The notes: generated by a model not told the origin, from the letters alone. Counted from the first letter of the stretch, positions 11,901-40,029 are shown. The stretch: DNA of 64,000 bases from Neoechinorhynchus agilis (GCA_051530055.1 CM121342.1:1150797-1214796), one strand, 5' to 3'. Translations and numbers: made by a program.

Positions 11901-12472
11901 GATGGGAAAGTTGGCGCGTATGGTCGACCAATTTGCAGGAGCCGAGTTGATTCCGAAAAGATGAAGCAAACTATCGTGAAGGATTTTCAGAACCTGTCAC
12001 CGGGGATAGAATTTATAACTCTAGACCGGTTGAGTCTTCTAGGAAGCTGCGTTTTTGGTTAACTTTCGGCGCTGTGCGAACGAGTTAATAAATTATCTTC
12101 GAACGACGCTCTGTTCCTTATCAAGAACATCCTCTTCATTCCAAAATTGCTGTATAAGTTACGCACAGCACCTTTTTAGACATAAGGATAAGCTGGCAAA
12201 ATTAGACTAGACGGTGAAAGCCTCTCTCGAGAAAATTCCAAATATTAAGCTGTCGGACGAGGCGTGGCGTCAAGCGTCCTTGCCTGTGTCGTCCGGCAGT
12301 TTAGGTATCCGAAAAGCAGCCGATATTTCTCTGCCAGCTTGTTTGGGATCGTATGAAGCAAGCCGCAAAATATTTCCATGCGTTATTTTCGAGAATTACA
12401 CTTTTGATGATGATTTCGTGGAGGCGCTTAATCTTTGGTATGGATATTCAGGCAGCAGCGAGCAGGTACCCG
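11900..12472 (+). mobile_element. CRE-clade non-LTR retrotransposon fragment (RT C-terminal region)
   Basis: LSLLGS..., LFLIKNILFIPKLLYKLRTAPF, WRQASLPVSSGSLGIRKAADISLPA. Confidence 0.85.
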
Positions 12473-12719
12473 GCAAAGTTGTACTGTATTCTGAAAATTT
12501 CACAATATGTTTGAACAATGTTCGTAAAAGTATGACAAAACAACAAGAAAGGTCAATCGCCATTGCGTACAATTGTTGTTTATAGACATCTTAGCACCTT
12601 ACATTCACTTTACCCTTCGACATTATTTGGTATTCAAAAGCAACAAACTCGCTTAAATACTGAACGACGATTTATTATTCAAAATACGATTTGTCTCGAT
12701 TCTTTATGGCGGTTCCGAT

Positions 12720-22009: not shown

Positions 22010-23860
22010 GAGAGTTGCGCTGAAATTGGGTGGGGTGTTGAGGCCTTTCCAGTTAGGATGCTGCACACCTTGTGGTGCCGAAGCCATTACTCACGCACTC
22101 CGCGACCATCTTGAAGTAGCAAAGGCTCCTTTGGTCGTCTTAAAGTTAGATTTTAAAAACGCCGTCAACTCCTTCCGCAGAGAGAAAATGTTGGATTCCA
22201 TCAAAGATTTTATCCCTGAAAGTTACCCCTACATTTTATTGGCCTACTCCAATAAAACCCCTCTCCTATACAACAATCAGATTATTTGGTCTCAATGTGG
22301 TGTCCAGCAGGGTGACCCCCTTGATCCCATTGGATTCGCGTATACAATCAATGAATTGGTACAATCACTAATTTCTCCTTTCAACGGTTGGTACTTGGAT
22401 GACGCCACACTCAGCGGCGATCCCCAGGTTGTTTTAAGGGACTTACAAACGATTATAAGCGAAGCAGAAAACTTGGACCTCGAACTGAATTTCGAAAAAT
22501 GCGAAATCCTTTTTCAGGGATTCGATGACAGTTCTCGTTCGACGATCATCGCAGATTTTCGGCAAGTTGCTCCCAGGGTACGCGAGGTTACAAAATACGA
22601 ATTTAATCTCCTCGGAAGCCCCATTTTCGCCGAAAATGTCTCAAAGGACCTCGAGGCCCACATACCGAAGCTCGAATTATTATGCACAAGAGCATGTGAG
22701 CTGTCGGCGTACGAAGCCTTCTTCCTTTTAAAGAATTGCCTATACATCCCCAAATTGATGTATAAGCTGAGAGCTGCTCCGTGTTTCGGGGAGAAAAGAG
22801 TTTTATCGGATCTTGACGGGTTTTGCGCTCTTTTTTAAAGAAAATTTTAAATATAAACATTACGGATACGGGCTGGCGGCAGGCTACGTTTCCAACCTCT
22901 TTTGGCGGCCTCGGCATCCGCACAGTGTCTGATTTAGCCCTTCCAGCGTTCCTGGCCTCTTACCGAGCCAGCAAAACGTACGCGGGAGCCCTTTCCAACA
23001 TGGGGCAAAACTCGCAATATTATTTGGACGGCTTATCGATCTGGCCATCCCGGACAGAGATCCCACACCTTCCGGAAAATGACCACAAGCAGTCAGCTTG
23101 AGACCTTCCCCTCATAAAGAAGATCCACAAATCCTTTAATAATCTTCTCGCCGAGGTTTCCCAAGTTCGTCTTGCGGCGTGTTCTACAAAGGAATCGGGA
23201 GCCTGGCTAAATGCTCTCCCCGCCCGACAATCGGAACTCTTCTAGAGGATTCTACGTTAAGGGTCGCAGTTTCTTTAAGATTGAGCCAGGATATTTGTAT
23301 CCCGCATCGCTGTCGCTCTATAGTTGACGCTAATGGCAGACACGGCCTCTGTTGTAAAATGTCCAGAGGGAGGTTTCCAAGACACTCAGAATTGAACTCA
23401 ATTTTGAGTGGAGCTCTAGATTTCGTCCACGCGCCCAATATTTTAGAGCCGAGTAATTTATGCCGCCTAGACCACGGTTTTTCCATGGCGGGAGGGAAAC
23501 CGCTTTTATGGGATGCGACTTGCGTGGACACGCTTGCCCCCAGTAATTTTCAGTTTTCAAAAAAGAGCCCTGGAGGTTCAGCGGTCGTAGCTGAGGAACG
23601 AAAGCGTTCAAAATATAGAGAGCTCCTGAGGAATTACCATTTCGTCCCTTTTGCCGTGGAAACGTATGGAGCCTTGGGACCATCAGCGCTCACTCTTCTC
23701 GTCGATTTGGGACGAAGGACGAAAAGGATGACGGGGGAACCGTGCTCTAGAAATTTCCTCGCTCAACGAATCGCAATTGCGATACAGCGAGGGAACCCTG
23801 CCAGTATACTGGCAACGTCGGGATGTTTACAGGAATGAAAAGCGAAATAGTTTTACCAAC
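22010..23860 (+). mobile_element. 5'-truncated CRE-clade non-LTR retrotransposon (RT + restriction-like endonuclease), disrupted
   Basis: QLGCCTPCGAEAITH, KLDFKNAVNS, GVQQGDPLDP, WYLDDATL; CCHC-like HGLCC and RLE motifs LLWDATCVDT, KYREL..YHFVPFAVETYGALG, IAIAIQRGN. Confidence 0.92.
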
Positions 23861-24574
23861 AAAAATGGAATAAATCGATTGCTCATAAAAAATTTTAAAA
23901 GTTTTGTAGCCGAGTGATCTAAATTCAATTCAGTTTGTTAAATCTCGACCGAATCTTACCAACTATAATAACGCTGGCATCAAGTGAGAAAATCGCGTGA
24001 ATCGCTTTTCTCTTTTCAATAAAAATTTTTCGTTTTTATTATGAGCTCTCTAAGCCATGAAAGCGGCTATAGTCGTCATCGGGCTTCGGTCCATGACCGA
24101 TACCTACTGTTTTTTATGTAGATACTCGCACGATTACGGTATTTAAGTGGGATGTTCTCGGTTTTACCTCTAAAGAATATTACAACGAGAAACTTTCTAT
24201 CCGCCAAGGCATGCGTTAGTAATCTCTGAAGCATGACAACCGATTTGCGTCTTCTAAGACGTTAATGACGAATGACTTAGTTGACGCATCAAGAAATATG
24301 ATCGATGCAAGCCATAAAGTCCTTAAGACGACTAGAAGTTCCCTTTCACTAATTTTGAACTTTACTCATGTAATGTTGATCGGAATTAATTTTTATTAAG
24401 GATAATATATAGAAATTTTTAGGGCCACGGTTTTACACGCATTGGAAACTGTTAATTAGACGCCAGAATATAAAACAAATGCTTAAATCTACTGCAGGAT
24501 TGTTTCGCTCATTACAAATAATCCGACAGATAAGAAGTTTTTGTAGCATTAGATTTGTTAATTTTAAGTCATTC

Positions 24575-26979
24575 ATACCACCGCTCTGGATCACTCAGCT
24601 GCCGTCCTGATGTAACGGTCGAAAGGACGGATGCAGCGTTCCCTCCCATTGCACAGCCAGACTTTTGTTTTGTAGGAGGAATGACCCTGATCTCGGATCG
24701 CCAGTGATCCGTATCAATCTCCCGGACAATTGCTTGATCAGGTTCAGTGCCGCGATACCAAACGACTCGAGTGTTTCGAAGCCAAATGAAACGAAATGAT
24801 AATTTCGACTCAGGTACCTGTATTTTGTCTTTTTGCGTTCCTCGCGAATTTTATGTTGCTGGCTGCGAATGGCGTCCCAGAGAACGCATTTTATTTCTCG
24901 CCACTGGAATACTTTAACACCTTCAGGTCTACGGTCATCGAGTCGGCAAAGATGACTCGGCTCTAGGATGTTGGGCACATTAGCAGTATTCAGGGCACGA
25001 CTAAGAGCATTGCGTTCATTTCGCCGTGTCGTGAGTACCTGCCGCCTTATTGCCGACAGAAGAGACCATGACGCCCCGGTGGTTCCACGGTGACTCCGCA
25101 ACGGCAGCGATGGGATGTCGGTACCCAAAGTCTCAGGGAATCTGCAATCCTTACGGACTCGTCGGAGAGAAGAATACTCACAGAAGGGCTCGGGATAGCG
25201 TTGAGACAAGCACCTGATTCTCTAGTAGAGACTGCCGCCAATCGAGTTTGCTTCACCAGGTAACGAGAATCTCAAATTAGAGAGTTGTGAATTCTTGCTA
25301 TCAAGGGTGAGTCCCAAACTGATTGTTTGCAAACATTGACTGGTACCTGTTCGCTGCTGCCTGAATATCCATACCAAAGATTAAGCGCCTCCACGAAATC
25401 ATCATCAAAAGTGTAATTCTCGAAAATAACGCATGGAAATATTTTGCGGCTTGCTTCATACGATCCCAAACAAGCTGGCAGAGAAATATCGGCTGCTTTT
25501 CGGATACCTAAACTGCCGGACGACACAGGCAAGGACGCTTGACGCCACGCCTCGTCCGACAGCTTAATATTTGGAATTTTCTCGAGAGAGGCTTTCACCG
25601 TCTAGTCTAATTTTGCCAGCTTATCCTTATGTCTAAAAAGGTGCTGTGCGTAACTTATACAGCAATTTTGGAATGAAGAGGATGTTCTTGATAAGGAACA
25701 GAGCGTCGTTCGAAGATAATTTATTAACTCGTTCGCACAGCGCCGAAAGTTGCGGTTGAAGATCGGCAATCTCTGCTTCAACATTAGAACCAAAAATGCA
25801 GCTACCTAAAAGACTCAACCGGTAGTAGTGATCAATTCTATCCCCGGTGACAGGTTCTAAAAATCTCTTACGATAGTTTACCTGGAAGCCTCATCTTCCA
25901 CGTTCATCACAACAATCTCGCATTTCTCAGCATTCAATTCAATGCCAATTTTCGCCGTCTCCGTCATGAGTGTCTCTAAATCGCGCAGTACAACAGAGGG
26001 GTTATCTCCGAGCGCTTCATCGTCCAAGTACCAGCCGTTATAGCTGGACTGGAGAGAGTGCGCGACGGGATTGACTGCAAGTGAGAAGACTATTGGGTCC
26101 CAAAGAATCCCCTGGGTATTAACGAAATAACGAAATGCTTCTGGTGCGTGATCTCTAACTACTTCGAGCAAATCTGCTCGGTGAACTGTGTTGAGTGCAT
26201 TTTTGAAATCACATTTCAAGATCTCGCACGGCTTTAAGTTTCCGATGATGAACTTGCGGAGTGAATGAACAATCGCCTCTGCGCCACAAGGTGTACAGCT
26301 GTCTAACTGAGTAGGGGAAGCAGCATTCCTACTTTTTCCGCTATCCTTTATCTAAAATTTTTGCGGTTAAGCGGCGCAGTTGTTCCAATTGCAATGCGAC
26401 CAATCCCACCTTCCTTTTTTGAGAGGGCATACAAAGATGCGCTGAAAAATAGTTCAATTGCTTTCGAATCAACTTGGCTCCTGCAAATTGGTCGACTACT
26501 CGTGCCAATGCATCTTCAACAGACTGGGCAGCGTCACCTACCTAAAAAGAAGTCATATCCTTGAAATGTTGAGGTCGCATCTTGTCAAGCCCGTAGAGAG
26601 GAGATTGCCATCAACAATTCTGATTTCGATGATGAAACATAATGGATCGTATCGAAGGACGAGGATACTTCGAAATACTGACGACCGCCATCACTGGGAC
26701 GTTTGGAACGAAGGGTTCGTAAAGTTTCTTCGTTATCTTTGGCGAGACTGCCCATTGATGATAAAAGACGAACTGCTCCTCTGACATCTCCGTCTGCGAG
26801 CTTCGAAGAAATGCGTCCAGCAACTGACCGATTTGAGTTTCGGCGGTGGTCACGCTCCTGGACACACTCCTTACGTAGCTCTCATACTGTCGAAAGGCAT
26901 TGAGTAAAATTTTTGCCAAAAGAACTTATTCGCTCTTTTATTTTTGTGGTCAAAGATCATTCAGAAACATCGCTGCCAG
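24575..26979 (-). mobile_element. CRE-clade retrotransposon, 3' part (interrupted by the HHR array)
   Basis: RPQHFKDM, KCDFKNALN, WYLDDEAL, WRQASLPVSSG, RHGLFC, KYRYLSRNYHFVSFGFETL; many frameshifts. Confidence 0.88.
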
Positions 26980-27421
26980 GTGTGCCGAAGGGTTTTTTGC
27001 GTGAGAAGCGCATCAGGGAAAATCTATGGAGGTTCCGGTTTGTTTGCCTCAAAGTCAGGATAAGAAATACCTGGAACGATCTACAATGTTTGAGGAAGGA
27101 TCTCGATATATGTAAGCAGTATTTGTCAGAAGTGTTGGGAAAGGAGGAATTTTCGCGTGTGATGGATATCGCGCTGGATGCTGGCCAAACTGCGAAGCGA
27201 ACTTCCAAAGATCGAATGAAAGCGAAATATGCCGCGTTATGCGAATCGAAGGTCGATCCGAGCCGACCGAGGAGTCAATCATATCCCGAGGAAACCCGGG
27301 ATCGTGAGGACTCTAGCGGGCATCGGTCGGTCGGTAGGACACTCATTAACCAGAAGGATGAGTTGTCTGCCGTCATTAATCTCATGTGAACCTCCACTCC
27401 ACTTCACTCGCATGGTAGATT

Positions 27422-27460
27422 ACACCCTGAAGAAGCCGTTGGACGGCGAAAGCTAGGTGT
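27422..27460 (+). ncRNA. Minimal type I hammerhead ribozyme (copy 1 of 7; others at 28147-28185, 28870-28908, 29595-29633, 30320-30358, 31045-31083, 31758-31796)
   Basis: ACACC-CTGAAGA-A-GCCGT-tgg-ACGGC-GAAA-GC-TA-GGTGT: stem I ACACC/GGTGT, core CUGANGA and GAAA, stem II GCCGT/ACGGC, palindromic stem III AGCU, CUA cleavage triplet. Confidence 0.88.
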
Positions 27461-30419
27461 TTCAATAAAATCTCTCTCTTTCAGTCGGATTGTCAATCAA
27501 ACAATCATCAATAGATAAAACATGCGGCTGAACAACCAAGCAGCGCTTAGTAATCTTATCGACATGCGGATGGACAGTCGATCTTCGCTGCTGCTAAGAA
27601 TTACATTGCGATGTTGGAGCGTCTGAAGGGTCACGAACAACGGATTCAGTTCCTCACAAGGTGCCTCCGAAATAAAATACTCCCTGCATTCCTCGATGGT
27701 GTCCGTGTGCCGAAGGAGTTTTTTTGCGTGAGAAGCGCATCAGGGAAAATCTATGGAGGTTCGGTTTGTTTGCCTCCAAAGCCAGGATAAAAATGCCGCA
27801 GACGATCTACAATGTTTGAGGAAGGATCTCGATATATGTAAGCAGTATTTGTCAGAAGTGTTGGGAAAGGAGGAATTTTCGCGTGTGATGGATATCGCGC
27901 TGGATGCTGGCCAAACTGCGAAGCAAACTTCCAAAGATCGAATGAAAGCGAAATATGCCGCGTTATGCGAATCGAAGGTCGATCCGAGCCGACCGAGGAG
28001 TCAATCATATCCCGAGAAACCCGGGATCGTGAGGACTCTAGCGGGCATCGGTCGGTCGGTAGGACACTCATTAACCAGAAGGATGAGTTGTCTGCCGTCA
28101 TTAATCTCATGTGAACCTCCACTCCACTTCACTCGCATGGTAGATTACACCCTGAAGAAGCCGTTGGACGGCGAAAGCTAGGTGTTTCATTAAAATCTCT
28201 CTCTTTCAGTCGGATTGTCTATCAAACAATCATCAATAGGTGAAACATGCGGCTGAACAACTAAGCAGCGCTTAGTAATCTTATCGACATGCAGATGGAC
28301 AGTCCGATCTTCGCTGCTGCCAAGAATTACATTGCGATGTTGGAGCGTCTTAAGGGTCACGAACAACGGATTCATTTCCTCACAAGGTGCCTCCGAAATA
28401 AAATACTCCCTGCATTCCTCGATGGTGTCCATGTGCCGAAGGGTTTTGCGTGAGAAGCGCATCGGGAAAATCTATGGAGGGTTCCGGTTTGTTTGCCTCA
28501 AAGTCAGGATAAGAAATACCTGGAACGATCTACAATGTTTGAGGAAGGATCTCGATATATGTTAGCAGTATTTGTCAGAAGTGTTGGGAAAGGAGGAATT
28601 TTCGCGTGTGATGGATATCGCGCTAGATGCTGGCCAAACTGCGAAGCGAACTTCCAAAGATCGAATGAAAGCGAAATATGCCGCGTTATGCGAATCGAAG
28701 GTCGATCCGAGCCGACCGAGGAGTCAATCATATCCCGAGAAACCCGGGATCGTGAGGACTCTAGCGGGCATCGGTCAGTCGGTAGGACACTCATTAACCA
28801 GAAGGATGAGTTGTCTGCCGTCATTAATCTCATGTGAACCTCCACTCCACTTCACTCGCATGGTAGATTACACCCTGAAGAAGCCGTTGGACGGCGAAAG
28901 CTAGGTGTTTCAATAAAATCTCTCTCTTTCAGTCGGATTGTCAATCAAACAATCATCAATAGATAAAACATGCGGCTGAACAACCAAGCAGCGCTTAGTA
29001 ATCTTATCGACATGCGGATGGACAGTCCGATCTTCGCTGCTGCTAAGAATTACATTGCGATGTTGGAGCGTCTGAAGGGTCACGAACAACGGATTCAGTT
29101 CCTCACAAGGTGCCTCCGAAATAAAATACTCCCTGCATTCCTCGATGGTGTCCGTGTGCCGAAGGGTTTTTTGCGCGAGAAGCGCATCAGGGAAAATCTA
29201 TGGAGGTTCCGGTTTGTTTGCCTCAAAGCCAGGATAAGAAATACCTGGAACGATCTACAATGTTTGAGGAAGGATCTCGATATATGTAAGCAGTATTTGT
29301 CAGAAGTGTTGGGAAAGGAATAATTTTCGCGTGTGATGGATATCGCGCTGGATGCTGGCCAAACTGCGAAGCGAACTTCCAAAGATCGAATGAAAGCGAA
29401 ATATGCCGCGTTATGCGAATCGAAGGTCGATCCGAGCCGACCGAGGAGTCAATCATATCCCGAGAGACCCGGGATCGTGAGGACTCTAGCGGGCATCGGT
29501 CGGTCGGTAGGACACTCATTAACCAGAAGGATGAGTTGTCTGCCGTCATGAATCTCATGTGAACCTCCACTCCACTTCACTCGCATTGTAGATTACACCC
29601 TGAAGAAGCCGTTTTACGGCGAAAGCTAGGTGTTTCAATAAAATCTCTCTCTTTCAGTCGGATTGTCAATCAAACAATCATCAATAGATAAAACGTGCGG
29701 TTGAACAACCAAGCAGCGCTTAGTAATCTTATCGACATGCGGATGGACAGTCCGATCTTCGCTGCTGCCAAGAATTACATTGCGATGTTGGAGCGTCTTA
29801 AGGGTCACGAACAACGGATTCATTTCCTCACAAGGTGCCTCCGAAATAAAATACTCCCTGCATTCCTCGATGGTGTCCGTGTGCCGAAGGGTTTTTTGCG
29901 CGAGAAGCGCATCAGGGAAAATCTATGGAGGTTCCGGTTTGTTTGCCTCAAAGTCAGGATAAGAAATACCTGGAACGATCTACAATGTTTGAGGAAGGAT
30001 CTCGATATATGTAAGCAGTATTTGTCAGAAGTGTTGGGAAAGGAATAATTTTCGCGTGTGATGGATATCGCGCTGGATGCTGGCCAAACTGCGAAGCGAA
30101 CTTCCAAAGATCGAATGAAAGCGAAATATGCCGCGTTATGCGAATCGAAGGTCGATCCGAGCCGACCGAGGAGTCAATCATATCCCGAGAGACCCGGGAT
30201 CGTGAGGACTCTAGCGGGCATCGGTCGGTCGGTAGGACACTCATTAACCAGAATGATGAGGTGTCTGCCGTCATGAATCTCATGTGAACCTCCACTCCAC
30301 TTCACTCGCATTGTAGATTACACCCTGAAGAAGCCGTTGGACGGCGAAAGCTAGGTGTTTCAATAAAATCTCTCTCTTTCAGTCGGATTGTCAATCAAAC
30401 AATCATCAATAGATAAAAC

Positions 30420-31001
30420 ATGCGGCTGAACAACCAAGCAGCGCTTGGTAATCTTATCGACATGCGGATGGACAGTCCGATCTTCGCTGCTGCTAAGAAT
30501 TACATTGCGATGTTGGAGCGTCTGAAGGGTCACGAACAACGGATTCAGTTCCTCACAAGGTGCCTCCGAAATAAAATACTCCCTGCATTCCTCGATGGTG
30601 TGCGTGTGCCGAAGGGTTTTTTGCGTGAGAAGCGCATCAGGGAAAATCTATGGAGGTTCCGGTTTGTTTGCCTCAAAGCCAGGATAAGAAATACCTGGAA
30701 CGATCTACAATGTTTGAGGAAGGATCTCGATATATGTAAGCAGTATTTGTCAGAAGTGTTGGGAAAGGAGGAATTTTCGCGTGTGATGGATATCGCGCTG
30801 GATGCTGGCCAAACTGCGAAGCGAACTTCCAAAGATCGAATGAAAGCGAAATATGCCGCGTTATGCGAATCGAAGGTCGATCCGAGCCGACCGAGGAGTC
30901 AATCATATCCCGAGAGACCCGGGATCGTGAGGACTCTAGCGGGCATCGGTCGGTCGGTAGGACACTTATTAACCAGAATGATGAGGTGTCTGCCGTCATG
31001 A
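30420..31001 (+). CDS. Penelope-like retroelement N-terminal domain ORF (193 aa; only fully intact copy of the repeat ORF)
   Basis: HEQRIQFLTRCLRNKILPAFL resembles the PLE H..FL.RC....I.P motif; unit 1 reads on to ..SAVINLM (VINLS-like); no RT or GIY-YIG motifs. Confidence 0.6.
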   Translation: MRLNNQAALGNLIDMRMDSPIFAAAKNYIAMLERLKGHEQRIQFLTRCLRNKILPAFLDGVRVPKGFLREKRIRENLWRFRFVCLKARIRNTWNDLQCLRKDLDICKQYLSEVLGKEEFSRVMDIALDAGQTAKRTSKDRMKAKYAALCESKVDPSRPRSQSYPERPGIVRTLAGIGRSVGHLLTRMMRCLPS

Positions 31002-31853
31002 ATCTCATGTGAACCTCCACTCCACTTCACTCGCATTGTAGATTACACCCTGAAGAAGCCGTTGGACGGCGAAAGCTAGGTGTTTCAATAAAATCTCTCT
31101 CTTTCAGTCGGATTGTGAATCAAACAATCATCAATAGATAAAACATGCGGCTGAACAACCAAGCAGCGCTTAGTAATCTTATCGACATGCGGATGGACAG
31201 TCCGATCTTCGCTGCTGCTAAGAATTACATTGCGATGTTGGAGCGTCTGAAGGGTCACGAACAACGGATTCAGTTCCTCACAAGGTGCCTCCGAAATAAA
31301 ATACTCCCTGCATTCCTCGATGGTGTCCGTGTGCCGAAGGGTTTTTGCGTGAGAAGCGCATCAGGGAAAATCTATGGAGGTTCGGTTGTTTTGCCTCAAA
31401 GCCAAGGATAAGCTGGAACGATCTACAATGTTTGGGGAAGGATCTCGATATATGTAAGCAGTATTTGTCAGAAGTGTTGGGAAAGGAGGAATTTTCGCGT
31501 GTGATGGATATCGCGCTGGATGCTGGCCAAACTGCGAAGCGAACTTCCAAAGATCGAATGAAAGCGAAATATGCCGCGTTATGCGAATCGAAAGTCGATC
31601 CGAGCCGACCGAGGAGTCAATCATATCCCGAGAGACCCGGGATCGTGAGGACTCTAGCGGGCATCGGTCGGTCGGTAGGACACTCATTAACCAGAAGGAT
31701 GAGTTGTCTGCCGTCATGAATCTCATGTGAACTTCCACTTCACTCGCATTGTAGATTACACCCTGAAGAAGCCGTTGGACGGCGAAAGCTAGGTGTTTCA
31801 ATAAAATCTCTCTCTTTCAGTCGGATTGTCAATCAAACAATCATCAATAGATA

Positions 31854-32230
31854 CTCAGAGTTAGTCTCGATAGTCTCTTTGCGGCCTGATATAGCGCGCC
31901 CCTTGGGATTATTTTCCTCGCACAATATCCCTACAAATAGAATTTTATTTTGTACTGGTGATGTCGTGAGAGGATTTTGGCGCACACAATCAATGGACTT
32001 AGGGAGTGAACCGGAACCGCCGCAGCGTGAATTACGGGGTTCATGGACCCTAAGAACTCCTGTTTTCGTCAGGAAGACTTGATGAAGTTGAAACAATCAC
32101 ATTGACGTTGTTCTCTTCACTTGGCTCGTTTTGGGCGGCCAAGTTTTCGTTTTCATATTGTGGTCTAGCATCCAGGTTCCGAGCGAATCGGTGGTGGAGA
32201 CATCGGTGTCGTCGTTGGTGGAGGCCGTTA
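31854..32230 (-). mobile_element. 5' part of the interrupted CRE element (N-terminal zinc-finger region)
   Basis: QCDC..(frameshift)..LTKTGVLRVHEPRNSRCGGSG fits the CRE-type C..C...G..R.HGP...C.GS motif; same strand as 24575-26979. Confidence 0.6.
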
Positions 32231-32547
32231 TGCGCTTATTTCAATCTCCTAAATATTTTACAGTTGTATTAGGATTTTAAGAGTATAAATTTATATCATC
32301 GTTGCGCGCAATCTTGATCATTGTTTGACAAATGCTTGGTCGTTACGCTAAAAATCATTGATATTGTGTTGTTTGGTGATTATAAAAATAGAGACTGTTT
32401 TATTGATCTCAATATTTCGTACGTCTCGTCGGACTTCTTTAGGTTGCTTGTAAGTTTTTAAATATGATAGGAAATCAATAAATCAGTCTCGATTTTTTAT
32501 AATCACAAAAGAAAACATATAAATGAATAACTTCTTTACAGAAAGTT

Positions 32548-32825
32548 GGCTCAGCCGGTTACAATTGTCCCGGAACCGGGCAAAAGTGGAGAACTTTATA
32601 CACCCGTAGTAATGCCAACGTGGTCCAGTGGACGAAATACTGAAGGGAGGAGGAAACTCATTGATGAATCCCGCCTCATCGGGAGGTATCTGAGGATCCG
32701 GACGGAGATGTACAAACCCATTACCGTACGGTCTTGGGTATTTAGCACAGACCAGCGCTTTCCCAGACCAAAATCGGTGGCTATGTGTCCAAAGTCAGCC
32801 GTGTATGGATACCTTAATTTACACA
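32548..32825 (+). mobile_element. Third copy of the TIR/tRNA-like short element, with an internal deletion between ggac direct repeats
   Basis: Starts ggctcagccggttacaattgtcc (reverse complement of 5186-5208); core shared with 4690-5208; lone terminus also at 53617-53630. Confidence 0.65.
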
Positions 32826-33128
32826 GTTCACTTTGTGTAATCTACAAATACGAAAACCTTAGCTACGCATGAAGAAAAAAAGGTAATTGTCTTCCATTTC
32901 GATTTAGAAATAAAGCGAATGCTGGTGGACATATCGTGACACTTCAGTCGCAACGTCCTTAGTAGCTACATAAATTTGATGCACAACTATGTGACTGATC
33001 ATCAGATAGAAAGATCAATGCATTCAATAGACTCCAAAGAGGCACAATTTTAGAATATTAGGAGATATTCTCAAACTAACGAAAACCTAAAGATTCTTTA
33101 TAAGGAAAACAACAACAATACATAACGA

Positions 33129-34214: not shown

Positions 34215-36540
34215 TCTCTCGACAATTAACACACTCACCACCTCCCGCCGAATTCCAGCTTTTGTCCTTTATCGACCGTCGCCATCACGCTGGCAGCATT
34301 GCCTCATTGTACTGCCAGCGAGATATTTTGTCGAAGGAATACGCCTGTTCTTGAGTCTCCGGTTGCCTCTCTCAAATTCTTCGAGAGATCCTGGAGCAGA
34401 GAGAGTGCCGAGCTGCCGAGCGCTCCATACGTCTCTACCCCAAAGGGGACAAAATAGTGAGCCCTCGATAAGTGAAGATATTTCCGTATTTTCCTCCCTT
34501 CCGCTGCACTGGCGGCACCACCGGCGATTTCGAGGGAGTAGGGGATATTGCTGGCTGCGAGGGTATCCACACACGTGGCGTCCCAGAGACTTCGAGACTG
34601 GTAGGCTCCCCTCAAACGATCCAAGAAAGGCCGGCAAAGCAAGGTCGACTAGTGCCCGAATTCCCAATCCCCCAGATGACACAGGCAAAGAAGCTTGTCG
34701 CCACGCCTCATCTGAGAGCTGGACATTTAAAATACGCTCGAGACAAGCCCTCACCTTGCCGTCGAGCTTAGCCAATCCTTCCTTGTGTTTGAAAAATGTT
34801 GCTGTGCGAACCTTGTACAATAACTTGGGGATGAAGAGCGCGTTCTTTATGAGAAACAAGGCTTCATGAGCCGAGAGAGAGCACACCCCATCGCACAGCA
34901 ACGGAAGTTTCGGTATGATATGGCCGATCTCATCTTCCACATTTGAATCGAAGACGCAACTGCCCAGGAGGCTGAGTTGTTCTCGAGTCACGAGTTTCAG
35001 GCCTGGAGCTACGGCTTCGAACCCAACCATTACTTCTTTGACTTTGGCGGCGTCTCCAATATTCAGTACAAGGAGCTCACATTTTCCAGCATTAAGTTCA
35101 ATGCCCATCTTCGAGGTCTCCCTAATCAGCGTCTCCAGATCGCGCGGTACAACGGAGGGATCACCTCCGAGCGTAGCGTCATCCAAGTACCAAGCGTTGA
35201 AGGTGGAATGGAGAGAATGTGCTATTGGATTTACTGTTAGGGAGAATGCGATTGGACCGAGGGGATCTCCTTGCTGCACTCCTCTTTCGGACCAAATGAG
35301 GTGGTCTTCGAAAAGCAAAGGAATCGCCGTCCCGTAAGCATTGAGAAAATACTGGAAGGCTTCTAGGGCAGCGGAACATGCTTTCTCTATTGAGAGAGTT
35401 AAAGGCGTTCCGAAAATCGCACTTAAGAATCACGCACGGCTCTAAGCTTCTCGTAGCAAAGTTTCGGAGCGCGTGGACCATAGCTTCCGCCCCGCAGGAT
35501 GTGCAGCAGCCCAGTTGGACTGGATGAAGTTGCTGTCCGGTTTTCTCTGTAATACGTTTGCAGAGAATTTTTCCTGTGAGTCGGCGTATCGCCGAAGATA
35601 CGGCGATGGGACGGATCCCACCTTCTTTTTTTGTGAGCGCACACAATGAGGCTCCGAAAAATAGGTCCTTTGCAACGGGGTTCAGGTCCTCTCCAGTTAG
35701 GCGGTCGACTATTCGAGAAAGCCCATTTCCTAGAGAGAGCTGCTTCACCAGTTGAAAAGGACATCATGTCCTTTAGGTGCTGAGGCCTTAGTCCGTCAAG
35801 CCCGTGACCCGAACCATTTGCAAAAGTTGAGATGGCCTTTTTTATCTCTGAAATTTGAGTGGGCGTCCTGTCTTGTATGGGAGGAGATGGAATTTCAAAA
35901 CTTCCGCTACTACATGAGTGCTTCGACCGAAGTATTTGTAGCGTCTCGCTGTCTCCTTTTGCGAAACTGTCGGAGGATGACAATAACCGAACAGCCCCCC
36001 GAACATCCACGTCCGCAAGATTCGAAGAGACACGCTAAGTCAGTGATCGTTTTGAAAAACGGCAGCGAAACTCTTCCTTCGTGCGTCCCTTACGAACCTG
36101 ATTTGTTGATGTCAAAGACACCCCAGTATCACCGCTGGTGCAGAGGACTAAGCGCGGGAAAGCGAAGAGCCGTGTCCATGATGGCGCACAGTTCGCTTGC
36201 AGGCAATCGTTGACCAATCCCGTAAATCGCGCGCCTTTAGGGATCCGTTTCAGGACGTTCCTGGGCAGAAACCGCACGATATCAGGTATCGAAATAGAAT
36301 CAGTGGTGATCTGAGGGGTCTCAGGCACAAAAAGGTTCGGTTAATTGTGGTGGAGAACCATACCCACTACAGCGGAGATCCCGGGGACCATGGACAAACA
36401 CAAACCCCCAGATTAGTTAATTTAAAAGACTTACCGCAAACCGGACACAAACCAGTAGAGACGCGTGGGAGCCCGGCAGCGTTGGTCTTCTCAGGTTGAA
36501 CGTGATCGATAAGTGGCGCGTTCAAATAATCTGCGTCACC
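34215..36540 (-). mobile_element. Near full-length but decayed CRE-clade retrotransposon
   Basis: CPVCGK zinc finger, VLKRIPKGAR, GLDGLRPQHLKDM, GIRPIAV, KCDFRNAFN, GVQQGDPLGP, WYLDDATLGG, LWDATCVDT, YFVPFGVETYGALG. Confidence 0.92.
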
Positions 36541-36784
36541 ACTTAAATGAAAAACCTTAATTTTGCAGATTTAACAATATAAACGGATTCAAACTTCTGC
36601 CGATTTGTACCAAGTTTCCTCGTGCGTGATTTTTCGCGTTACTTTTTTAAACCATTTAATCGAATAATTTGAAAGTCTTAGGATTATAGAATATTGTCTC
36701 AGTAATGAAATCGATTGTAACTTATTGTAAACGCTACCTTAATTCTAAAACAATTGTGAACTAATTTCCATATTAAATTTTTTT

Positions 36785-38270
36785 CGGTGGTTCAAGCTGG
36801 AGATGCTGGGAGCGCTGCGGAAGGACGTTAAACGGCGAAATACCTCGATTTATCCAGGGTCCATGTGTTTGCCCCTTTTGGGTTGAGACCTACGGATCTC
36901 TTGGTAGCGAGGCTCCTCAACTCCTGAGGGATCTGAAGCGACGCCTTGAGGTTATAACCGGTGATGCAAAGTCAGGTCAACACCTGGTTCAAAACATCAG
37001 CATCGTCGTGTTGAGAGGAGCAACTCAACCTCCTGAGTAGCTGCGTCTTGGATTAAAATGTAGAAGCTGAGATCGGCCGTATCATACCCAAACTTTCGTT
37101 GCTGTGCCATAGGGTGAGCGCTCTCTCGGCTCACGAAGCGTTATTTTTGATAAAGAACGCACTCTTTATTCCGAAATTGTTAATTCAAACACAAGGAAGG
37201 ATTGGCTAAGCCCGACGACAAGGTGAGGGCTTGTCTCGAGCGTATTTTAAATGTCCACCTCCCAGATGAGGTGTGCGACAATCTTCATTGCCTGTGTCAT
37301 CTGGGGGGGAACGGGCATTCGGGCGCTAGTAGCCCTTGCCAGCCTTTCTTGGATCGTATGAGGGGAGTCAACCAATAGTGAAGAAAATTTTGAGGTAAAT
37401 TTTTTGTCTTGACCAAGACTTTGTGGTGGCGGTTGAGGAATGGTGCCAGCAGACAGGCGCTAACCATGTTCCCGTGAATGGTCTCAGACAGCCGATCTGG
37501 GACAGACCTCTCGTCGCGAGAGCTCCCAGCTCTTTACTTTCAGGTTTTCGCGATGGGGTCGTCCGAGCTAGATTGTTCACGAGAATCGGGGCGTGGTTGG
37601 AGGCTGTTCCTCTGGCATCTGTGGGAACTCTTCTCACTGATGAGGTAACGAGTATCACAGCGTCCTTAAGGCTTGGTCTCCCGATATACACGCCGCTGTC
37701 GATGTGGGTCTTTGGTTGATGTTTTCGGGCGACACGGTCTCCTCTGCAGAAGGTCAGGAGGAAGGTTCTCACGCCATTCTGAGATCAATAGCGTAATTTC
37801 TCGGGCGTTGAGAACATCGAACTTTTCCAACATCTTGGAACCCACCCATCTTTGTCGACTGGACAATCGTCGACCTGACGGAATTTCGGTCTTTCCGTGG
37901 CGGGAGGGCAAATGCCTTCTCTGGGACGCCACGTTTGTGGACACTTTCGCAGTAAGCAACATTCCCTACTCTCTCGAAAAAGCTGGAGATGCAGCCTAAC
38001 CAGGGGCCCACTATTTTGTCCCCTTCGGATTAGAGACGTATGGAGCGCTTGGCAGCTCGGCACTCTCTCTGCTCCAGGATCTCTAGAAGAAATTGAGAGA
38101 AACGACCGGCGACGAACGAGCAGGTGTATTCCTGCGACAAAATATCTCGCTCGCAGTACAACGAGGCAATGTTGCTAGCGTGATAGAGACCGCCGAGTAA
38201 GGAGAGAAGCTCCAATTTTGCGGACGGTGGTGATTGCACGTTTTGTGCTTTATTATTGTAAAACCTTTTG
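36785..38270 (+). mobile_element. Rearranged CRE-clade 3' fragments, ending with a 3' UTR
   Basis: RHGLLCRRSGGRFSRHSEIN, RLDNRRPDGIS, LLWDATFVDT, FVPFGLETYGAL, AVQRGN; related to the 34215-36540 copy in opposite orientation. Confidence 0.85.
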
Positions 38271-38502: not shown

Positions 38503-40029
38503 ATGTCAATGTTCTGCGATTATTTGTCCAGTGAGATTTTAATCCACTCCATTCCTTGGGATGAGCCACTTCCCGTCCAAAAACGTTCGATGGAGCATAT
38601 CCATTCAGGCAAAAACGTGTTTATACGAGCTCGGACAGGTTCAGGGAAGACAGCAGCGTTCGCTTTACCAATTCTCGATAGAATGCTCACCCAAGACGAC
38701 ATCCGCCGAGCGGTGTTCCTTGCTCCAACCCGTGAACTCACTAATCAAATCAAATGCGTTTTGAACGCTTTGCTGGACGGATTATTATCGGCTAAATACG
38801 AAATCCGTCTGATTGACCTAAATGCATCGAATGAAGGTTACGAATCCTCACAAAAGGAGTTATTGATCGGTACACCTGCTAGATTCGCGTCCTTTTTAAA
38901 GACGAACAAAAATCGATTGGTCGATGTGTTGGTGATCGATGAAGCAGATTTAGTCATTGGAATGGAGCTTGATCGCGATTTGAAGAAGATTATCGAATCA
39001 TGCGGTCGACCCAATCAGCTTATTCTTGTTTCGGCTACTTTGGATAAAAAAGGTTCCGAGGAGTTTGCAGAGATGATAACGGGCGGACCTTCAGCGGCTG
39101 TTCATGTGTGCCAGAAACAATCACTTCCTGAGCAACTTGAACAATTTCGTATAGATTGCAATGAAGATCAAGACAAATACGTACTTCTCGTAGCTCTACT
39201 TAAACTAGGCATCCTCCAACCTCCACCTATGATTGTATTCACAAGTTCGACTAATCGATCATATCGGCTAAGGCTTGTTCTCGAGAGGTTTGGTCTCAAA
39301 TGCCTTACTCTAAATGCGGAGCTTCCTCGAGAATGTCAAATGCACACTGTCGACCAATTTAATCGTGGCGTTGTCGATCTTTTGATTTGTACGGATCAAC
39401 GAGGAGATCGTGGACATGTTTGTCCTCGCGGACTTGATTTCCGATCACTCACGTACGTCATCAATTTTGATTGCCCTTCAACGGTTACCGAATACGTTCA
39501 TCGTGTTGGTCGCGCTTGTCGTCTAGATGATAACGGAGCTGCTTTAACTCTTGTTTGTACCGAGCAGGAGCATAAAGCAATCAGTGATATTGAAGCGAAA
39601 CTCAAAGATCTAAAGATCTTTGCTTATCCACGGGAAGAGGTAAGCGCCTTTCAGTATAGAGTCCGGGACTCGCTTCAGATGGCTTCAAAAGCTGCTATTC
39701 GAAGAACGAGAGCTCAAGAACTTAGAACAGAAATGATCGCTAATGAGAAATTGGCGCGGTCTTATTGGGCAGGGAATTTACGCGAATTGGAGTTGTTGAA
39801 AGATTCAAGTCGACGAGTGCATCCATTACTAACATCTTCCCATCAAAAAGTGTTCAAACATGTACCTTCTTACATGGTGCCGAAGCATTTGAATGTAGTT
39901 ACGTCCACCTCGAAAAGACGCGTTGTGAAAAAGAAGAAAAGATTTAGTGGAGGACACAGTAAAAGAAGCTGTGATCCCATGATGAATCCGAAAAGAGCTT
40001 TAAAAAAGATGAAAGATGGAACCGTGTAA
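38503..40029 (+). CDS. DDX56: DEAD-box RNA helicase DDX56/DBP9, intronless
   Basis: ARTGSGKTAAF, APTRELTNQ, GTPAR, DEAD, SAT, RGLDF, YVHRVGRACR; DBP9-type C-terminus (FQYRVRD..A.IR..R..EL..E..NEKL, KHVPSYMVP); first ATG at 38503. Confidence 0.92.
   Translation: MSMFCDYLSSEILIHSIPWDEPLPVQKRSMEHIHSGKNVFIRARTGSGKTAAFALPILDRMLTQDDIRRAVFLAPTRELTNQIKCVLNALLDGLLSAKYEIRLIDLNASNEGYESSQKELLIGTPARFASFLKTNKNRLVDVLVIDEADLVIGMELDRDLKKIIESCGRPNQLILVSATLDKKGSEEFAEMITGGPSAAVHVCQKQSLPEQLEQFRIDCNEDQDKYVLLVALLKLGILQPPPMIVFTSSTNRSYRLRLVLERFGLKCLTLNAELPRECQMHTVDQFNRGVVDLLICTDQRGDRGHVCPRGLDFRSLTYVINFDCPSTVTEYVHRVGRACRLDDNGAALTLVCTEQEHKAISDIEAKLKDLKIFAYPREEVSAFQYRVRDSLQMASKAAIRRTRAQELRTEMIANEKLARSYWAGNLRELELLKDSSRRVHPLLTSSHQKVFKHVPSYMVPKHLNVVTSTSKRRVVKKKKRFSGGHSKRSCDPMMNPKRALKKMKDGTV

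What the first reader, a model, noticed from the sequence alone, without database searches (positions are those of the whole stretch)
26980..31853. Protein-coding, hammerhead-ribozyme tandem multimer (retrozyme-like PLE derivative)
Seen: ~6.7 head-to-tail units of ~725 bp. Each carries ACACC-CTGAAGA-A-GCCGT/ACGGC-GAAA-GCTA-GGTGT, then AATAAA, then an ATG-initiated ORF (intact in one unit, 193 aa). Across the seven HHR copies the only variation is in the stem II loop (tgg to ttt at ~29613). Known: minimal type I HHRs with a palindromic stem III typify Penelope-like pLTRs and can cleave as dimers; non-autonomous tandem HHR elements (retrozymes) give monomer and circular RNAs but are generally non-coding. 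Inference: this is a non-autonomous unit that lost RT and GIY-YIG yet keeps the PLE N-terminal domain. A read-through transcript would be cut into ~725-nt monomers, possibly circularised, each with one ORF.
Basis: partly seen in the sequence, partly recalled or inferred. Interest (0 to 1): 0.88.

Follow-up and report, generated by a model that had tools for sequence, protein, structure and literature searches.

The report
Gutted Penelope retrotransposon array with ribozymes
A 4.9-kb head-to-tail array of a 725-bp "gutted" Penelope-like retrotransposon, each unit keeping a minimal hammerhead ribozyme and the start and the very end of the parent gene, looks like an intermediate between full Penelope elements and the non-coding "retrozyme" repeats, though most gene copies in it are already broken.

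Summary
Window 26978-31853 (+) holds a 5'-truncated unit followed by six full units of 713-725 bp. There are seven copies of one 39-nt minimal type I hammerhead, and one intact 193-aa ORF (30420-31001).

- ORF residues 1-150 are homologous to the N-terminus of 730-950-aa Penelope-like element (PLE) proteins that carry RT and GIY-YIG domains.
- The window contains no PLE RT or endonuclease.
- Each unit also keeps the last ~15 codons of the endonuclease ORF, just upstream of the ribozyme. This makes the unit an internal-deletion derivative.
- A degenerate RT+GIY-YIG relative lies on the same chromosome. It has the same C-terminal tail and ribozyme region, and its 3' end falls at an equivalent position.

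Rfam's hammerhead models miss the motif. A covariance model built only from two foreign PLE hammerheads ranks the seven copies first (E about 1e-4), and helices I and II covary across four PLE lineages.

Cleavage, circularisation and trans-mobilisation remain inference. Five of the six full ORF copies are disrupted, and the unit RNA is not rod-like.

Verdict: a non-autonomous PLE derivative lying between PLEs and non-LTR retrozymes. It is a new variant of a known kind, of moderate interest.

The parts
26978..31853 (+). Whole head-to-tail array. It consists of a 5'-truncated first unit (starting at unit position ~251), six full units (725, 723, 725, 725, 725 and 713 bp, measured cut site to cut site) and a terminal 62 nt.
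27422..27460 (+). Minimal type I hammerhead, copy 1. Predicted cut after 27455.
28147..28185 (+). Hammerhead copy 2. Predicted cut after 28180.
28870..28908 (+). Hammerhead copy 3. Predicted cut after 28903.
29595..29633 (+). Hammerhead copy 4, with loop II reading UUU instead of UGG. Predicted cut after 29628.
30320..30358 (+). Hammerhead copy 5. Predicted cut after 30353.
31045..31083 (+). Hammerhead copy 6. Predicted cut after 31078.
31758..31796 (+). Hammerhead copy 7. Predicted cut after 31791.
30420..31001 (+). The only intact ORF, 193 aa. Residues 1-153 (30420-30878) form the PLE N-terminal all-helical domain. Residues 154-193 are an out-of-frame, disordered tail.
27522..28100 (+). Disrupted ORF copy in unit 1. 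It carries 1-nt deletions and a 2-nt insertion that shift the frame.
28247..28825 (+). Disrupted ORF copy in unit 2. It has the nonsense changes Q6* and K107* and a 2-nt deletion.
28970..29323 (+). ORF copy in unit 3, truncated by E118* (117 aa).
29695..30048 (+). ORF copy in unit 4. The start codon is changed from ATG to GTG, and it also has E118*.
31145..31411 (+). ORF copy in unit 6, frameshifted by 1-nt and 5-nt deletions (88 aa open).
27300..27389 (+). Remnant of the C-terminal end of the PLE endonuclease ORF (...GRTLINQKDELSAVINLM*). It is open in all seven copies, with stop codons at 27387, 28112, 28835, 29560, 30285, 31010 and 31728. Only in this first copy does an extra G (alignment column 570; one base in the GAGG run at 27289-27292, within CCCGAGGAAACC) put it in frame with the N-terminal domain.
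31792..31853 (+). Terminal 62-nt A/C-rich tail after the last cut site. The array ends 5 nt before the position of the start codon, which is the family's canonical 3' end.
27464..27469 (+). AATAAA hexamer 9-14 nt after the cut site. It repeats in 6 of 7 units, with ATTAAA at 28189-28194. Its function is untested.

Best explanation
This is a non-autonomous, internally deleted Penelope-like element (PLE) that sits in the genome as a 6.7-unit head-to-tail multimer.

Each 725-bp unit contains, in order:
- a 62-nt A/C-rich tail;
- an ORF for the roughly 150-aa helical N-terminal domain of the PLE protein;
- a short junction left by the deletion of the rest of the ORF, including the RT domain and nearly all of the GIY-YIG endonuclease;
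- the last ~15 codons of the endonuclease ORF;
- 32 nt of 3' UTR;
- a minimal type I hammerhead that has no helix III hairpin.

Shown here: the anatomy, the homology, the covariation of the ribozyme helices, the presence of a related RT+EN-type copy in the same genome, and a 3' end shared with that copy.

Inferred:
- A read-through transcript brings two hammerheads together through the palindromic AGCU. They form a double hammerhead and cut after GCUA. [quoted passage not shown]
- Such RNAs, either linear with 62-nt terminal redundancy or ligated into circles, are copied by the RT/EN of an autonomous PLE. Copying starts at the site 62 nt past the hammerhead and runs on for more than one unit. 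This would explain an array with a complete 3' end and a truncated 5' end.
- The array was later reshaped by gene conversion or unequal exchange and is now decaying.
For: Array and motif.

Hammerhead core and helices:
- The core is complete: C3 U4 G5 A6 A7 G8 A9, G12 A13 A14, an A15.1/U16.1 pair and A17.
- The motif shows all four traits listed for PLE min-HHRs in PMC4209133: families with compensatory changes, an extra nucleotide between 9 and 10.1, a G10.1-C11.1 pair and a palindromic 15.x-16.x.
- The monomer folds into helices I and II at -13.7 kcal/mol, z = -3.1.
- Covariance model R1 was built only from the hammerheads upstream of two foreign full-length PLE ORFs (L004, L005). It ranks the seven window copies first, at 25.8-26.7 bits and E about 1e-4. 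The next hit scores 14.2 bits with E 0.53.
- Across four PLE lineages, 95% of cells are paired against 70% in shuffles. Seven of 10 pairs show compensatory change, 0 of 500 shuffles reach the observed values, and slid controls give 18-42%.
- C3-G8 is replaced by U3-A8 in two of the lineages.
- The cut site lies 62-75 nt upstream of the 'MRL...' start codon in all of them: 67 nt here, 69 in L004, 62 in L005 and 75 in L001.

ORF:
- Exhaustive phmmer gives 24 hits, aligned residue 1 to residue 1 with 729-950-aa proteins. The best is E 2.7e-19 at 35% identity.
- P0004 has RVT_1 and GIY-YIG. Others carry DUF8422 and HTH_animal.
- tblastn of these proteins hits the window only inside the array and only with their first ~150-170 residues.
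- AlphaFold gives pLDDT above 90 for helices spanning residues 1-153 and about 50 for residues 154-193.

Internal deletion:
- The tail RTLINQKDELSAVMNLM* matches LLKKQDELSFSMSPL* at the end of a degenerate PLE copy on the same chromosome. That copy has a YLRYVDD RT motif and a FIYIGNTERPLRQRVKKH GIY-YIG motif (L008, minus strand).
- That copy ends 6 nt before the start-codon position, and the array ends 5 nt before it.

Mechanism from the literature:
- Dimer-dependent, weak cleavage of PLE min-HHRs, and the circular-RNA, more-than-unit reverse-transcription model (PMC4209133).
- Internal RT initiation near the 3' end (PMC11167929).
- Retrozymes as derivatives of PLE pLTRs (10.64898/2026.07.22.740005).
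Against: - No Rfam hammerhead model scores the motif, even at E<=10 on a 101-nt slice.
- PLE min-HHRs cleave poorly in vitro. For the Anolis PLE, hammerhead cleavage was not needed for insertion in vitro, and no reads began or ended at the presumptive cut site in public RNA-seq data.
- The double-hammerhead fold is no more stable than two monomers: -25.5 against -25.4 kcal/mol.
- Five of six ORFs are broken.
- Units differ by 1.4-5%, and variants are shared in a mosaic pattern. Units 2 and 4 share three variants, and units 0-2 differ as a block from units 3-6. One rolling-circle event followed only by point mutation does not explain this.
- No target-site duplication was found and no empty site is available.
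- The related RT+EN copy found in the same genome is degenerate and only about 70-80% similar, so an active partner has not been shown.
- Conservation of the hammerhead within the array is not clearly above background.
Confidence: 0.72

Rival explanations
1. Dead satellite. A single internally deleted PLE copy, or an ordinary partial tandem, was amplified at the DNA level by unequal crossing-over. The hammerheads and ORFs would then be inherited relics that are neither transcribed nor cleaved, and nothing is mobilised. This overlaps with the best explanation on what the sequence is. It differs on how the array arose and on whether it is active now.
For: - Adjacent and non-adjacent units share variants in blocks and mosaics, as in satellite evolution.
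- Five of six ORFs are disrupted.
- Units have diverged by 1.4-5%.
- No target-site duplication was found.
- The hammerhead is not significantly better conserved than other parts of the unit.
- The 2026 retrozyme preprint itself proposes local amplification by unequal crossover.
Against: - The array has the asymmetry expected of target-primed reverse transcription. It ends precisely at the family's canonical 3' terminus and starts inside a unit.
- All seven hammerhead cores are intact, whereas both older relatives in L008 have lost theirs, one by G12 to A plus helix II mismatches and one by an internal deletion.
- The consensus ORF is intact.
Confidence: 0.25
2. Functional 'coding retrozyme'. 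The N-terminal-domain ORF would be kept by selection because its product binds the element's own RNA, or dimerises with the full-length PLE protein, and so recruits RT/EN in trans or acts as a dominant-negative. Hammerhead cleavage 67 nt upstream would create the 5' end and allow cap-independent translation.
For: - The consensus and one unit are intact, and all residues conserved across PLE N-termini are kept, for example C48 and P55.
- The domain is a confident helical fold that ends exactly where homology ends.
- The equivalent region of the Anolis PLE is predicted to be a head-to-tail homodimerisation helix and a putative nucleic-acid-binding domain.
- The spacing from hammerhead to ATG is conserved at 62-75 nt in four lineages.
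- Ribozyme self-cleavage can drive cap-independent translation (10.1101/2024.05.16.594327).
Against: - Five of six copies here carry nonsense, frameshift or start-loss mutations.
- Substitutions show no excess of synonymous change.
- An intact consensus is also expected for a recently formed deletion derivative.
- No expression data are available.
Confidence: 0.1
3. Assembly artefact. The tandem would be an over-expansion, or mis-join, of one or two real units.
For: Tandem repeats of this size are error-prone in assemblies, and read data could not be examined.
Against: - Every unit is distinguishable by private substitutions and indels, with pairwise differences of 10-39 per ~720 nt.
- The array lies inside a 16.4-Mb chromosome-scale record.
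Confidence: 0.03
4. Chance resemblance. The CUGAAGA...GAAA motif would not be a hammerhead at all.
For: Rfam models give no hit, and a loose core pattern is common by chance.
Against: - The full descriptor gives 0 hits in 100 shuffles.
- An independent covariance model recovers all seven copies.
- Compensatory changes are seen, and the position upstream of homologous PLE ORFs is conserved.
Confidence: 0.01

Closest known systems
Minimal hammerhead ribozymes in the pLTRs of Penelope-like elements (Cervera & de la Pena 2014, PMC4209133; for example Cercyon of Schistosoma mansoni)
   Same: - Type I topology with no helix III hairpin and a palindromic 15.x-16.x (AGCU).
- An extra nucleotide between A9 and G10.1, and a G10.1-C11.1 pair.
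- A short 5-bp helix I.
- Location near the element's 3' end, just upstream of the ORF of the next unit.
- A U3-A8 core covariant in relatives.
   Different: - Helix II is 5 bp with a 3-nt loop, whereas 7-8 bp is described for the main schistosome families.
- Here the host element has lost RT and EN.
- The seven copies are almost identical, whereas the paper stresses high variability within a genome.
Metazoan non-LTR retrozymes (Cervera & de la Pena 2020, PMC7229834; Li, Clavereau & Pollet 2026 preprint, 10.64898/2026.07.22.740005)
   Same: - Head-to-tail repeats, each with one type I hammerhead.
- Non-autonomous, and proposed to derive from PLEs and depend on them.
- Unit length within the reported 51-972 bp range.
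- About 7 units, which is typical: 75% of families have at most seven.
   Different: - Described retrozymes are non-coding, give 170-400-nt highly self-paired circular RNAs, and match only the pLTR of PLEs.
- This unit is 725 bp and its RNA folds no better than shuffles (z = -1.1).
- It carries both ends of the PLE ORF, including an intact-in-consensus 193-aa reading frame.
Non-autonomous Chlamys PLE derivatives such as MRC1 in Chlamydomonas (Craig et al. 2021, PMC8557442)
   Same: [quoted passage not shown]
   Different: - Chlamys elements belong to the clade with an N-terminal endonuclease and lack canonical hammerheads.
- They are from green algae.
- No retained N-terminal helical-domain ORF is described for them.
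Full-length EN+ Penelope/Poseidon-type PLEs (for example PAc of Anolis, Frangieh et al. 2024, PMC11167929)
   Same: - A homologous N-terminal helical domain.
- A hammerhead next to the start codon.
- Tandem or pLTR organisation and 5' truncation.
- A defined 3' end a few tens of nt past the hammerhead, consistent with internal RT initiation.
   Different: - No RT and no GIY-YIG domain. Only ~15 C-terminal codons remain.
- The unit is 0.7 kb instead of about 3 kb.
HDV-like ribozymes at the 5' ends of R2 and other non-LTR retrotransposons
   Same: A self-cleaving ribozyme placed just upstream of the element's ORF. It defines the 5' end of a co-transcript and has been reported to promote translation initiation (cited).
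   Different: A different ribozyme class and a different retrotransposon class. Those ribozymes act as monomers.

Membership tests
Hammerhead ribozyme, type I, minimal PLE variant | Complete catalytic core: C3 U4 G5 A6 N7 G8 A9, G12 A13 A14, an A15.1-U16.1 pair, and H17 that is not G | tested here: met
   All seven copies read CUGAAGA...GAAA-GCU-A.
Hammerhead ribozyme, type I, minimal PLE variant | Helices I and II base-paired and supported by compensatory changes in relatives | tested here: met
   The MFE fold forms both helices. 95% of cells are paired, 7 of 10 pairs show compensatory change, and 0 of 500 shuffles reach this. Caveats: only 6 distinct sequences, and the alignment was fitted to the model.
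Hammerhead ribozyme, type I, minimal PLE variant | [quoted passage not shown] | tested here: met
   A bulged A, a G-C closing pair and AGCU are present. Relatives have ACGU or UAUA.
Hammerhead ribozyme, type I, minimal PLE variant | Match to a hammerhead covariance model | tested here: inconclusive
   The Rfam hammerhead families give no hit at gathering score or at E<=10. Model R1, built from two independent PLE min-HHRs, finds all seven copies at E about 1e-4.
Hammerhead ribozyme, type I, minimal PLE variant | Self-cleavage at the predicted site, as a dimer | not testable with these tools
   The energy of the double-hammerhead fold equals that of two monomers, which decides nothing.
Penelope-like element (autonomous, EN+) | PLE-type reverse transcriptase domain | tested here: not met
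   tblastn of full-length PLE proteins matches the window only with their residues ~1-170. The ORF has no Pfam hit.
Penelope-like element (autonomous, EN+) | GIY-YIG endonuclease domain | tested here: not met
   Only the last ~15 codons of the ORF remain. The catalytic motifs are absent.
Penelope-like element (autonomous, EN+) | Conserved N-terminal domain that begins the single ORF | tested here: met
Penelope-like element (autonomous, EN+) | Tandem/pLTR arrangement, 5' truncation, and a hammerhead near a defined 3' end | tested here: met
   The 3' end falls at an equivalent position (5 nt vs 6 nt before the start codon) to that of the L008 minus-strand copy.
Penelope-like element (autonomous, EN+) | Optional 30-40-bp 'tail' extension at one end, and a target-site signature | tested here: inconclusive
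   No target-site duplication was found. 82 bp of unassigned sequence lie between the last LINE homology (26896) and the start of the array.
Non-LTR retrozyme | Head-to-tail repeats, each with a type I hammerhead, lacking RT | tested here: met
Non-LTR retrozyme | Non-coding unit | tested here: not met
   The consensus and unit 5 encode a 193-aa ORF homologous to PLE proteins.
Non-LTR retrozyme | Small (about 170-400 nt), highly self-paired RNA | tested here: not met
   The unit is 725 nt. Its MFE is -226.7 against -217.9 +/- 8 for shuffles, z = -1.1.
Non-LTR retrozyme | Expressed as linear and circular unit-length RNAs | not testable with these tools
   No transcript data for this species were accessible.

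The most novel reading that the evidence does not exclude
The 725-nt unit could be a translated retrozyme. Hammerhead cleavage, with or without circularisation, would yield an uncapped RNA whose ribozyme-defined 5' end drives cap-independent translation of a ~150-aa helical PLE N-terminal domain. That mini-protein would bind its own RNA, or heterodimerise with the full-length PLE protein, and so capture RT/EN in trans or poison it as a dominant-negative. If so, retention of the N-terminal domain is the feature that lets this deletion derivative parasitise its parent.
Probability: 0.1. Interest if true: 0.8.

Novelty: new variant of a known kind. Interest (0 to 1): 0.5.

Why it matters
Non-LTR retrozymes have been proposed to be non-autonomous offspring of Penelope-like elements. 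So far the evidence for this is co-occurrence and similarity restricted to the pLTR.

This array fits retrozyme criteria in three respects: tandem organisation, one type I hammerhead per unit, and no RT. At the same time it still carries both ends of the PLE ORF, so the internal-deletion step is visible in the sequence. It therefore looks like an intermediate between the two kinds of element.

It also provides a compact 725-nt natural substrate for open questions about PLE biology:
- whether minimal hammerheads really cut as dimers in vivo;
- whether the site 62 nt past the hammerhead is where reverse transcription starts;
- whether more-than-unit cDNA arises from circles or from template jumps;
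- whether the N-terminal helical domain acts in cis or in trans.

If the ORF proves irrelevant, this is simply a well-preserved example of a decaying non-autonomous PLE array.

Tried and rejected
Searches that found nothing:
- TRF found nothing because its longest period is 500. The repeat finder was used instead.
- Rfam gave no hammerhead, or any credible family, at gathering score on the whole window, at E<=10 on 6 kb, or on 101 nt.
- Pfam on the ORF gave nothing.
- The word-indexed protein search with the ORF gave nothing. Only the exhaustive phmmer search found relatives.
- An exact-product look-up of the ORF found nothing on record.
- Two metagenome scans, one with the single ORF and one with a 7-sequence N-terminal alignment, gave no confirmed relatives. 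Alignment A1 was too diverse to seed a scan.
- Foldseek against the PDB gave no match better than E = 1, only generic helical bundles.

Tests that were uninformative:
- Target-site duplication: nothing longer than 7 nt, which is chance level.
- Empty site inferred from the LINE copy in the left flank: homology to the other LINE copy stops at 26896 and does not resume to the right of the array, so insertion into a LINE cannot be shown.
- Other copies of the unit elsewhere in the window: none.
- Extra conservation of the hammerhead within the array: 2 variable columns of 39, P = 0.21. For 0 of 36 core and stem columns, P = 0.019, but several other 50-nt bins are equally invariant.
- RNAcofold of two motifs: the MFE is a trivial extended duplex, and the double hammerhead is isoenergetic with two monomers.

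Other points:
- P0002 (3873 aa, 8 matched stretches) is a discoidin-repeat protein that matches only a low-complexity stretch of the query. It was discarded.
- Comparing the C-terminal tail with distant PLE C-termini was only suggestive, with empirical P of 0.006-0.036. The case rests on the same-genome copy.
- The 133-bp tandem upstream of the PLE in L002 shows no hammerhead core.

Full report
**1. The observation**

The window is part of NCBI assembly GCA_051530055.1, chromosome record CM121342.1, positions 1,150,797-1,214,796. The array occupies 1,177,774-1,182,649. The organism is an invertebrate animal. Its DDX56 helicase is nearest, at only 40% identity, to that of the acanthocephalan Pomphorhynchus laevis. 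The window is about 36% GC, contains ordinary animal genes and several decayed LINE copies.

The array is real.
- The repeat finder returns seven in-register copies spaced 713-726 bp apart. TRF returned nothing only because its period limit is 500.
- I cut the region at the predicted ribozyme sites and aligned the pieces. This gives a 5'-truncated first unit, six full units of 725, 723, 725, 725, 725 and 713 bp, and a final 62 nt.
- Local alignment to the consensus puts the left edge at 26978-26980 (unit position ~251) and the right edge at 31853.
- The 39-nt motif ACACC-CTGAAGA-A-GCCGT-TGG-ACGGC-GAAA-GCT-A|GGTGT occurs seven times. Its only variation is TGG to TTT in loop II at 29613-29615.
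- A structural descriptor I wrote requires the core, a helix II of at least 4 bp closed by G-C, a palindromic helix III, H17, and a helix I of at least 4 bp. It finds these seven sites and none in 100 shuffles.
- AATAAA follows the cut site in six copies and ATTAAA in one.
- The ATG lies 67 nt after the cut, and one ORF (30420-31001, 193 aa) is intact.

**2. Is the motif a hammerhead?**

All conserved core positions are present: C3 U4 G5 A6 A7 G8 A9, G12 A13 A14, A15.1 with U16.1, and A17. The motif shows every feature that Cervera and de la Pena list as distinguishing genuine PLE minimal hammerheads from chance. [quoted passage not shown] The isolated 39-mer folds into helices I and II (-13.7 kcal/mol, z = -3.1).

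Rfam does not see it. There was no hammerhead hit at gathering score on the whole window, none at E<=10 on 6 kb, and none on a 101-nt slice. I read the miss as a blind spot of models that expect a helix III hairpin. That is my explanation, not something I tested. What is documented is that the 2014 study found these motifs with RNAmotif descriptors rather than with covariance models.

I then made an independent test.
- The closest full-length relatives of the ORF come from other organisms. They carry look-alike motifs 69 nt (L004) and 62 nt (L005) upstream of their start codons.
- A covariance model built from those two sequences alone and run without filters over the window ranks the seven copies first, at 25.8-26.7 bits and E about 1e-4. 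The next hit scores 14.2 bits with E = 0.53.
- The same model picks up a third PLE lineage, in L001 and L002. In L001 the cut site lies 75 nt upstream of an 'MRL' start codon.
- On the alignment of these lineages, 95% of cells are paired against 70% in shuffles, and 7 of 10 pairs carry compensatory changes. No shuffle out of 500 reaches the observed values, and sliding the partners drops pairing to 18-42%.
- The tertiary pair C3-G8 is replaced by U3-A8 in two lineages. This covariant was previously described for schistosome Cercyon elements.

Caveats: there are only six distinct sequences, I delimited two of them by eye, and the alignment is fitted to the model. Even so, I regard the hammerhead assignment as secure. 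Catalytic activity is not shown.

**3. What the ORF is**

Pfam and the word-indexed search found nothing. The exhaustive phmmer search found 24 proteins. In nearly all of them, residues 1-150 of the query align to residues 1-150 of the hit. The long hits are PLE proteins:
- P0004 (867 aa) has RVT_1 and GIY-YIG.
- P0018 and P0025 carry DUF8422 and HTH_animal, and end in the GIY-YIG 'VVYKLTC...YIGET' motif.
- P0001 has YLRYVDD.

Searched back against the window, these proteins hit only the array and only with their N-terminal ~150-170 residues. There is therefore no PLE RT or EN anywhere in the 64 kb.

AlphaFold, using the 24-sequence alignment, gives a confident all-helical domain for residues 1-153 (pLDDT above 90). 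Its long helices span 19-50, 71-113 and 116-153. Residues 154-193 are a disordered tail. Foldseek finds no specific structural relative. In the Anolis PLE the equivalent region is described as a putative nucleic-acid-binding domain, and its extended helix (27-173) is predicted to mediate head-to-tail homodimerisation (PMC11167929).

**4. The unit is an internal-deletion derivative**

In the +1 frame, all seven copies keep an open stretch ...DREDSSGHRSVGRTLINQKDELSAV(I/M)NLM* that stops 32 nt before the hammerhead. Compared with the C-termini of distant PLE proteins this is only suggestive, with empirical P of 0.006-0.036.

One of the phmmer hits (P0011) turned out to be encoded on the same chromosome, about 15 Mb away (L008). 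That locus holds a typical PLE head-to-head pair.
- The plus-strand copy has a mutated hammerhead region (G12 to A, with helix II mismatches) followed by the start of the N-terminal domain, 41% identical in protein.
- The minus-strand copy is 5'-truncated. tblastn hits to it are weak but colinear, running from residue ~118 to ~883 of PLE proteins. It contains an RT motif YLRYVDD and a GIY-YIG motif FIYIGNTERPLRQRVKKH (Pfam GIY_YIG_2, E = 7e-4, below threshold). It has many stops and frameshifts.
- The reading frame of that copy ends ...LLKKQDELSFSMSPL*. This matches the array's LINQKDELSAVMNLM* including the stop position, and is followed by the homologous hammerhead region.

Hence the 725-bp unit consists of the N-terminal domain, a deletion junction (roughly unit positions 550-610), the last ~15 codons of the endonuclease ORF, the 3' UTR, the hammerhead and a 62-nt tail.

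In the truncated first unit an extra G (alignment column 570; one base of the GAGG run at 27289-27292) puts the two ORF remnants in one frame. Whether that in-frame arrangement is ancestral cannot be decided.

**5. Termini and origin of the array**

The minus-strand copy in L008 ends 6 nt before the position of the start codon, and the array ends 5 nt before it. Two independent insertions therefore share an equivalent 3' end, about 62 nt past the hammerhead cut site, in an A/C-rich stretch. This agrees with two published points: that PLE hammerheads lie near the 3' end, and that a PLE reverse transcriptase initiates internally, near an AC-rich stem-loop just downstream of the hammerhead.

A complete 3' end combined with a start inside a unit is the signature of target-primed reverse transcription. 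A multimer with that signature is what the more-than-unit or circular-template model predicts.

Against a single clean rolling-circle event:
- Units differ by 1.4-5%.
- Variants are shared in mosaics. Units 2 and 4 share three changes in the 5' part, units 3 and 4 share two changes (at unit positions 273 and 417-418, the latter giving E118*), units 4 and 5 share two in the 3' part, and units 0-2 differ as a block from units 3-6.

Either heterogeneous templates were copied, or gene conversion and unequal exchange reshaped the array afterwards. No target-site duplication is detectable. No empty site could be reconstructed. The left flank is a decayed LINE on the minus strand up to 26896, but its homology does not resume to the right of the array.

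**6. Present state**

Five of the six full ORF copies are disabled:
- unit 1: frameshifts;
- unit 2: Q6*, K107* and a frameshift;
- units 3 and 4: E118*;
- unit 4: ATG to GTG as well;
- unit 6: frameshifts.

The consensus ORF is intact, so the source element encoded it when the array formed. This locus is now decaying. The hammerhead cores are all intact, but within-array conservation is not clearly above background. The unit-length RNA folds no better than shuffled sequence (z = -1.1), unlike the highly self-paired retrozyme circles.

**7. Mechanism**

Shown: the anatomy, the homologies, the ribozyme covariation, a resident related PLE family, and the shared 3' end.

Inferred:
- Read-through transcription, with pairing of two hammerheads through AGCU.
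- Cleavage after GCUA into 725-nt RNAs.
- Possible ligation of those RNAs into circles.
- Reverse transcription by the RT/EN of an autonomous PLE, starting 62 nt past the hammerhead.

Known limits on this inference:
- PLE minimal hammerheads cleave weakly, and only as dimers or trimers, in vitro.
- For the Anolis element, cleavage was dispensable for insertion in vitro and no cut-site ends were found in public RNA-seq data.
- Thermodynamics does not favour the double hammerhead.

The conserved 62-75-nt spacing between hammerhead and start codon is worth testing as a translation feature. There are reports that ribozyme self-cleavage can drive cap-independent translation. I give this low probability, given the state of the ORFs.

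**8. Comparison with what is known, and verdict**

The element fails membership as an autonomous PLE, because it has no RT or EN. It also fails two descriptive features of non-LTR retrozymes: being non-coding, and giving small self-paired RNA. It meets all the other features of both.

Non-autonomous PLE derivatives that form multicopy head-to-tail insertions are known from the hammerhead-less Chlamys clade. Retrozymes have been argued to descend from PLE pLTRs. My literature searches found no description of a hammerhead-bearing tandem unit that keeps the PLE N-terminal domain ORF. These searches cover only open-access text.

I therefore class it as a new variant of a known kind. It looks like an intermediate form between PLEs and retrozymes.

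Noticed in passing
window 22026-26896, 34232-38236, 58669-59624, 11911-12480: Several decayed copies of one non-LTR (LINE-type) retrotransposon family with RVT_1, in both orientations. One copy, on the minus strand, forms the left flank of the array up to 26896. Two other copies end at the same internal position, equivalent to window 26508.
   Followed up: partly
L008 (same chromosome, CM121342.1 16235861-16248175, reversed), 3440-6315: A head-to-head pair of older PLE copies related to the array's unit, lying ~0.13 Mb from the end of the 16.4-Mb record. One is a 5'-truncated RT+GIY-YIG-type copy on the minus strand. The other is a plus-strand copy with a mutated hammerhead (G12 to A) and a truncated N-terminal ORF. 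This is the inverted arrangement described for PLEs.
   Followed up: partly
window 27289-27292 (first, truncated unit): One extra G (a base of the GAGG run in CCCGAGGAAACC; alignment column 570), present only in this unit. It fuses the N-terminal-domain frame with the endonuclease C-terminal tail into one ORF (26913-27389 as listed). It could be the ancestral in-frame deletion product or a private insertion.
   Followed up: partly
window 32630-32830 and 4745-5190: A repeat of ~170-200 bp, 90-96% identical, is present in the right flank of the array and again near 5 kb, partly in both orientations. It was not identified.
   Followed up: no
window 32230-32309 (-): A sub-threshold Rfam match to the C/D-box snoRNA family snoZ159 (26.2 bits against a gathering score of 39, E = 0.13). 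Probably chance.
   Followed up: no
L002 8588-9350: A 133-bp tandem repeat of at least 5 copies lies upstream of (about 0.65 kb from) a ~3-kb PLE (pLTR spacing 2997) in an ENA metagenome contig. No hammerhead core is visible in it.
   Followed up: partly
L006 1-30 and 3604-3633; L003 1500-2075 and 4850-5376; L009 420-3016: Other PLE contigs show the usual arrangements. L006 is a terminally redundant 3603-bp unit, either tandem or a circular assembly. L003 is a direct tandem. L009 is a head-to-head inverted pair.
   Followed up: no
window 45354-48029 (-): A long ORF (891 aa as listed, called as 916 aa in the assembly) rich in P/V 'PVP(I/V)' repeats, with three near-identical C-terminal repeats. 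It has no Pfam family on record.
   Followed up: no
window 38503-40029 (+): An intronless DDX56-type DEAD-box helicase gene. Its nearest named relative, from Pomphorhynchus laevis, is only 40% identical, so the host lineage is poorly sampled.
   Followed up: partly
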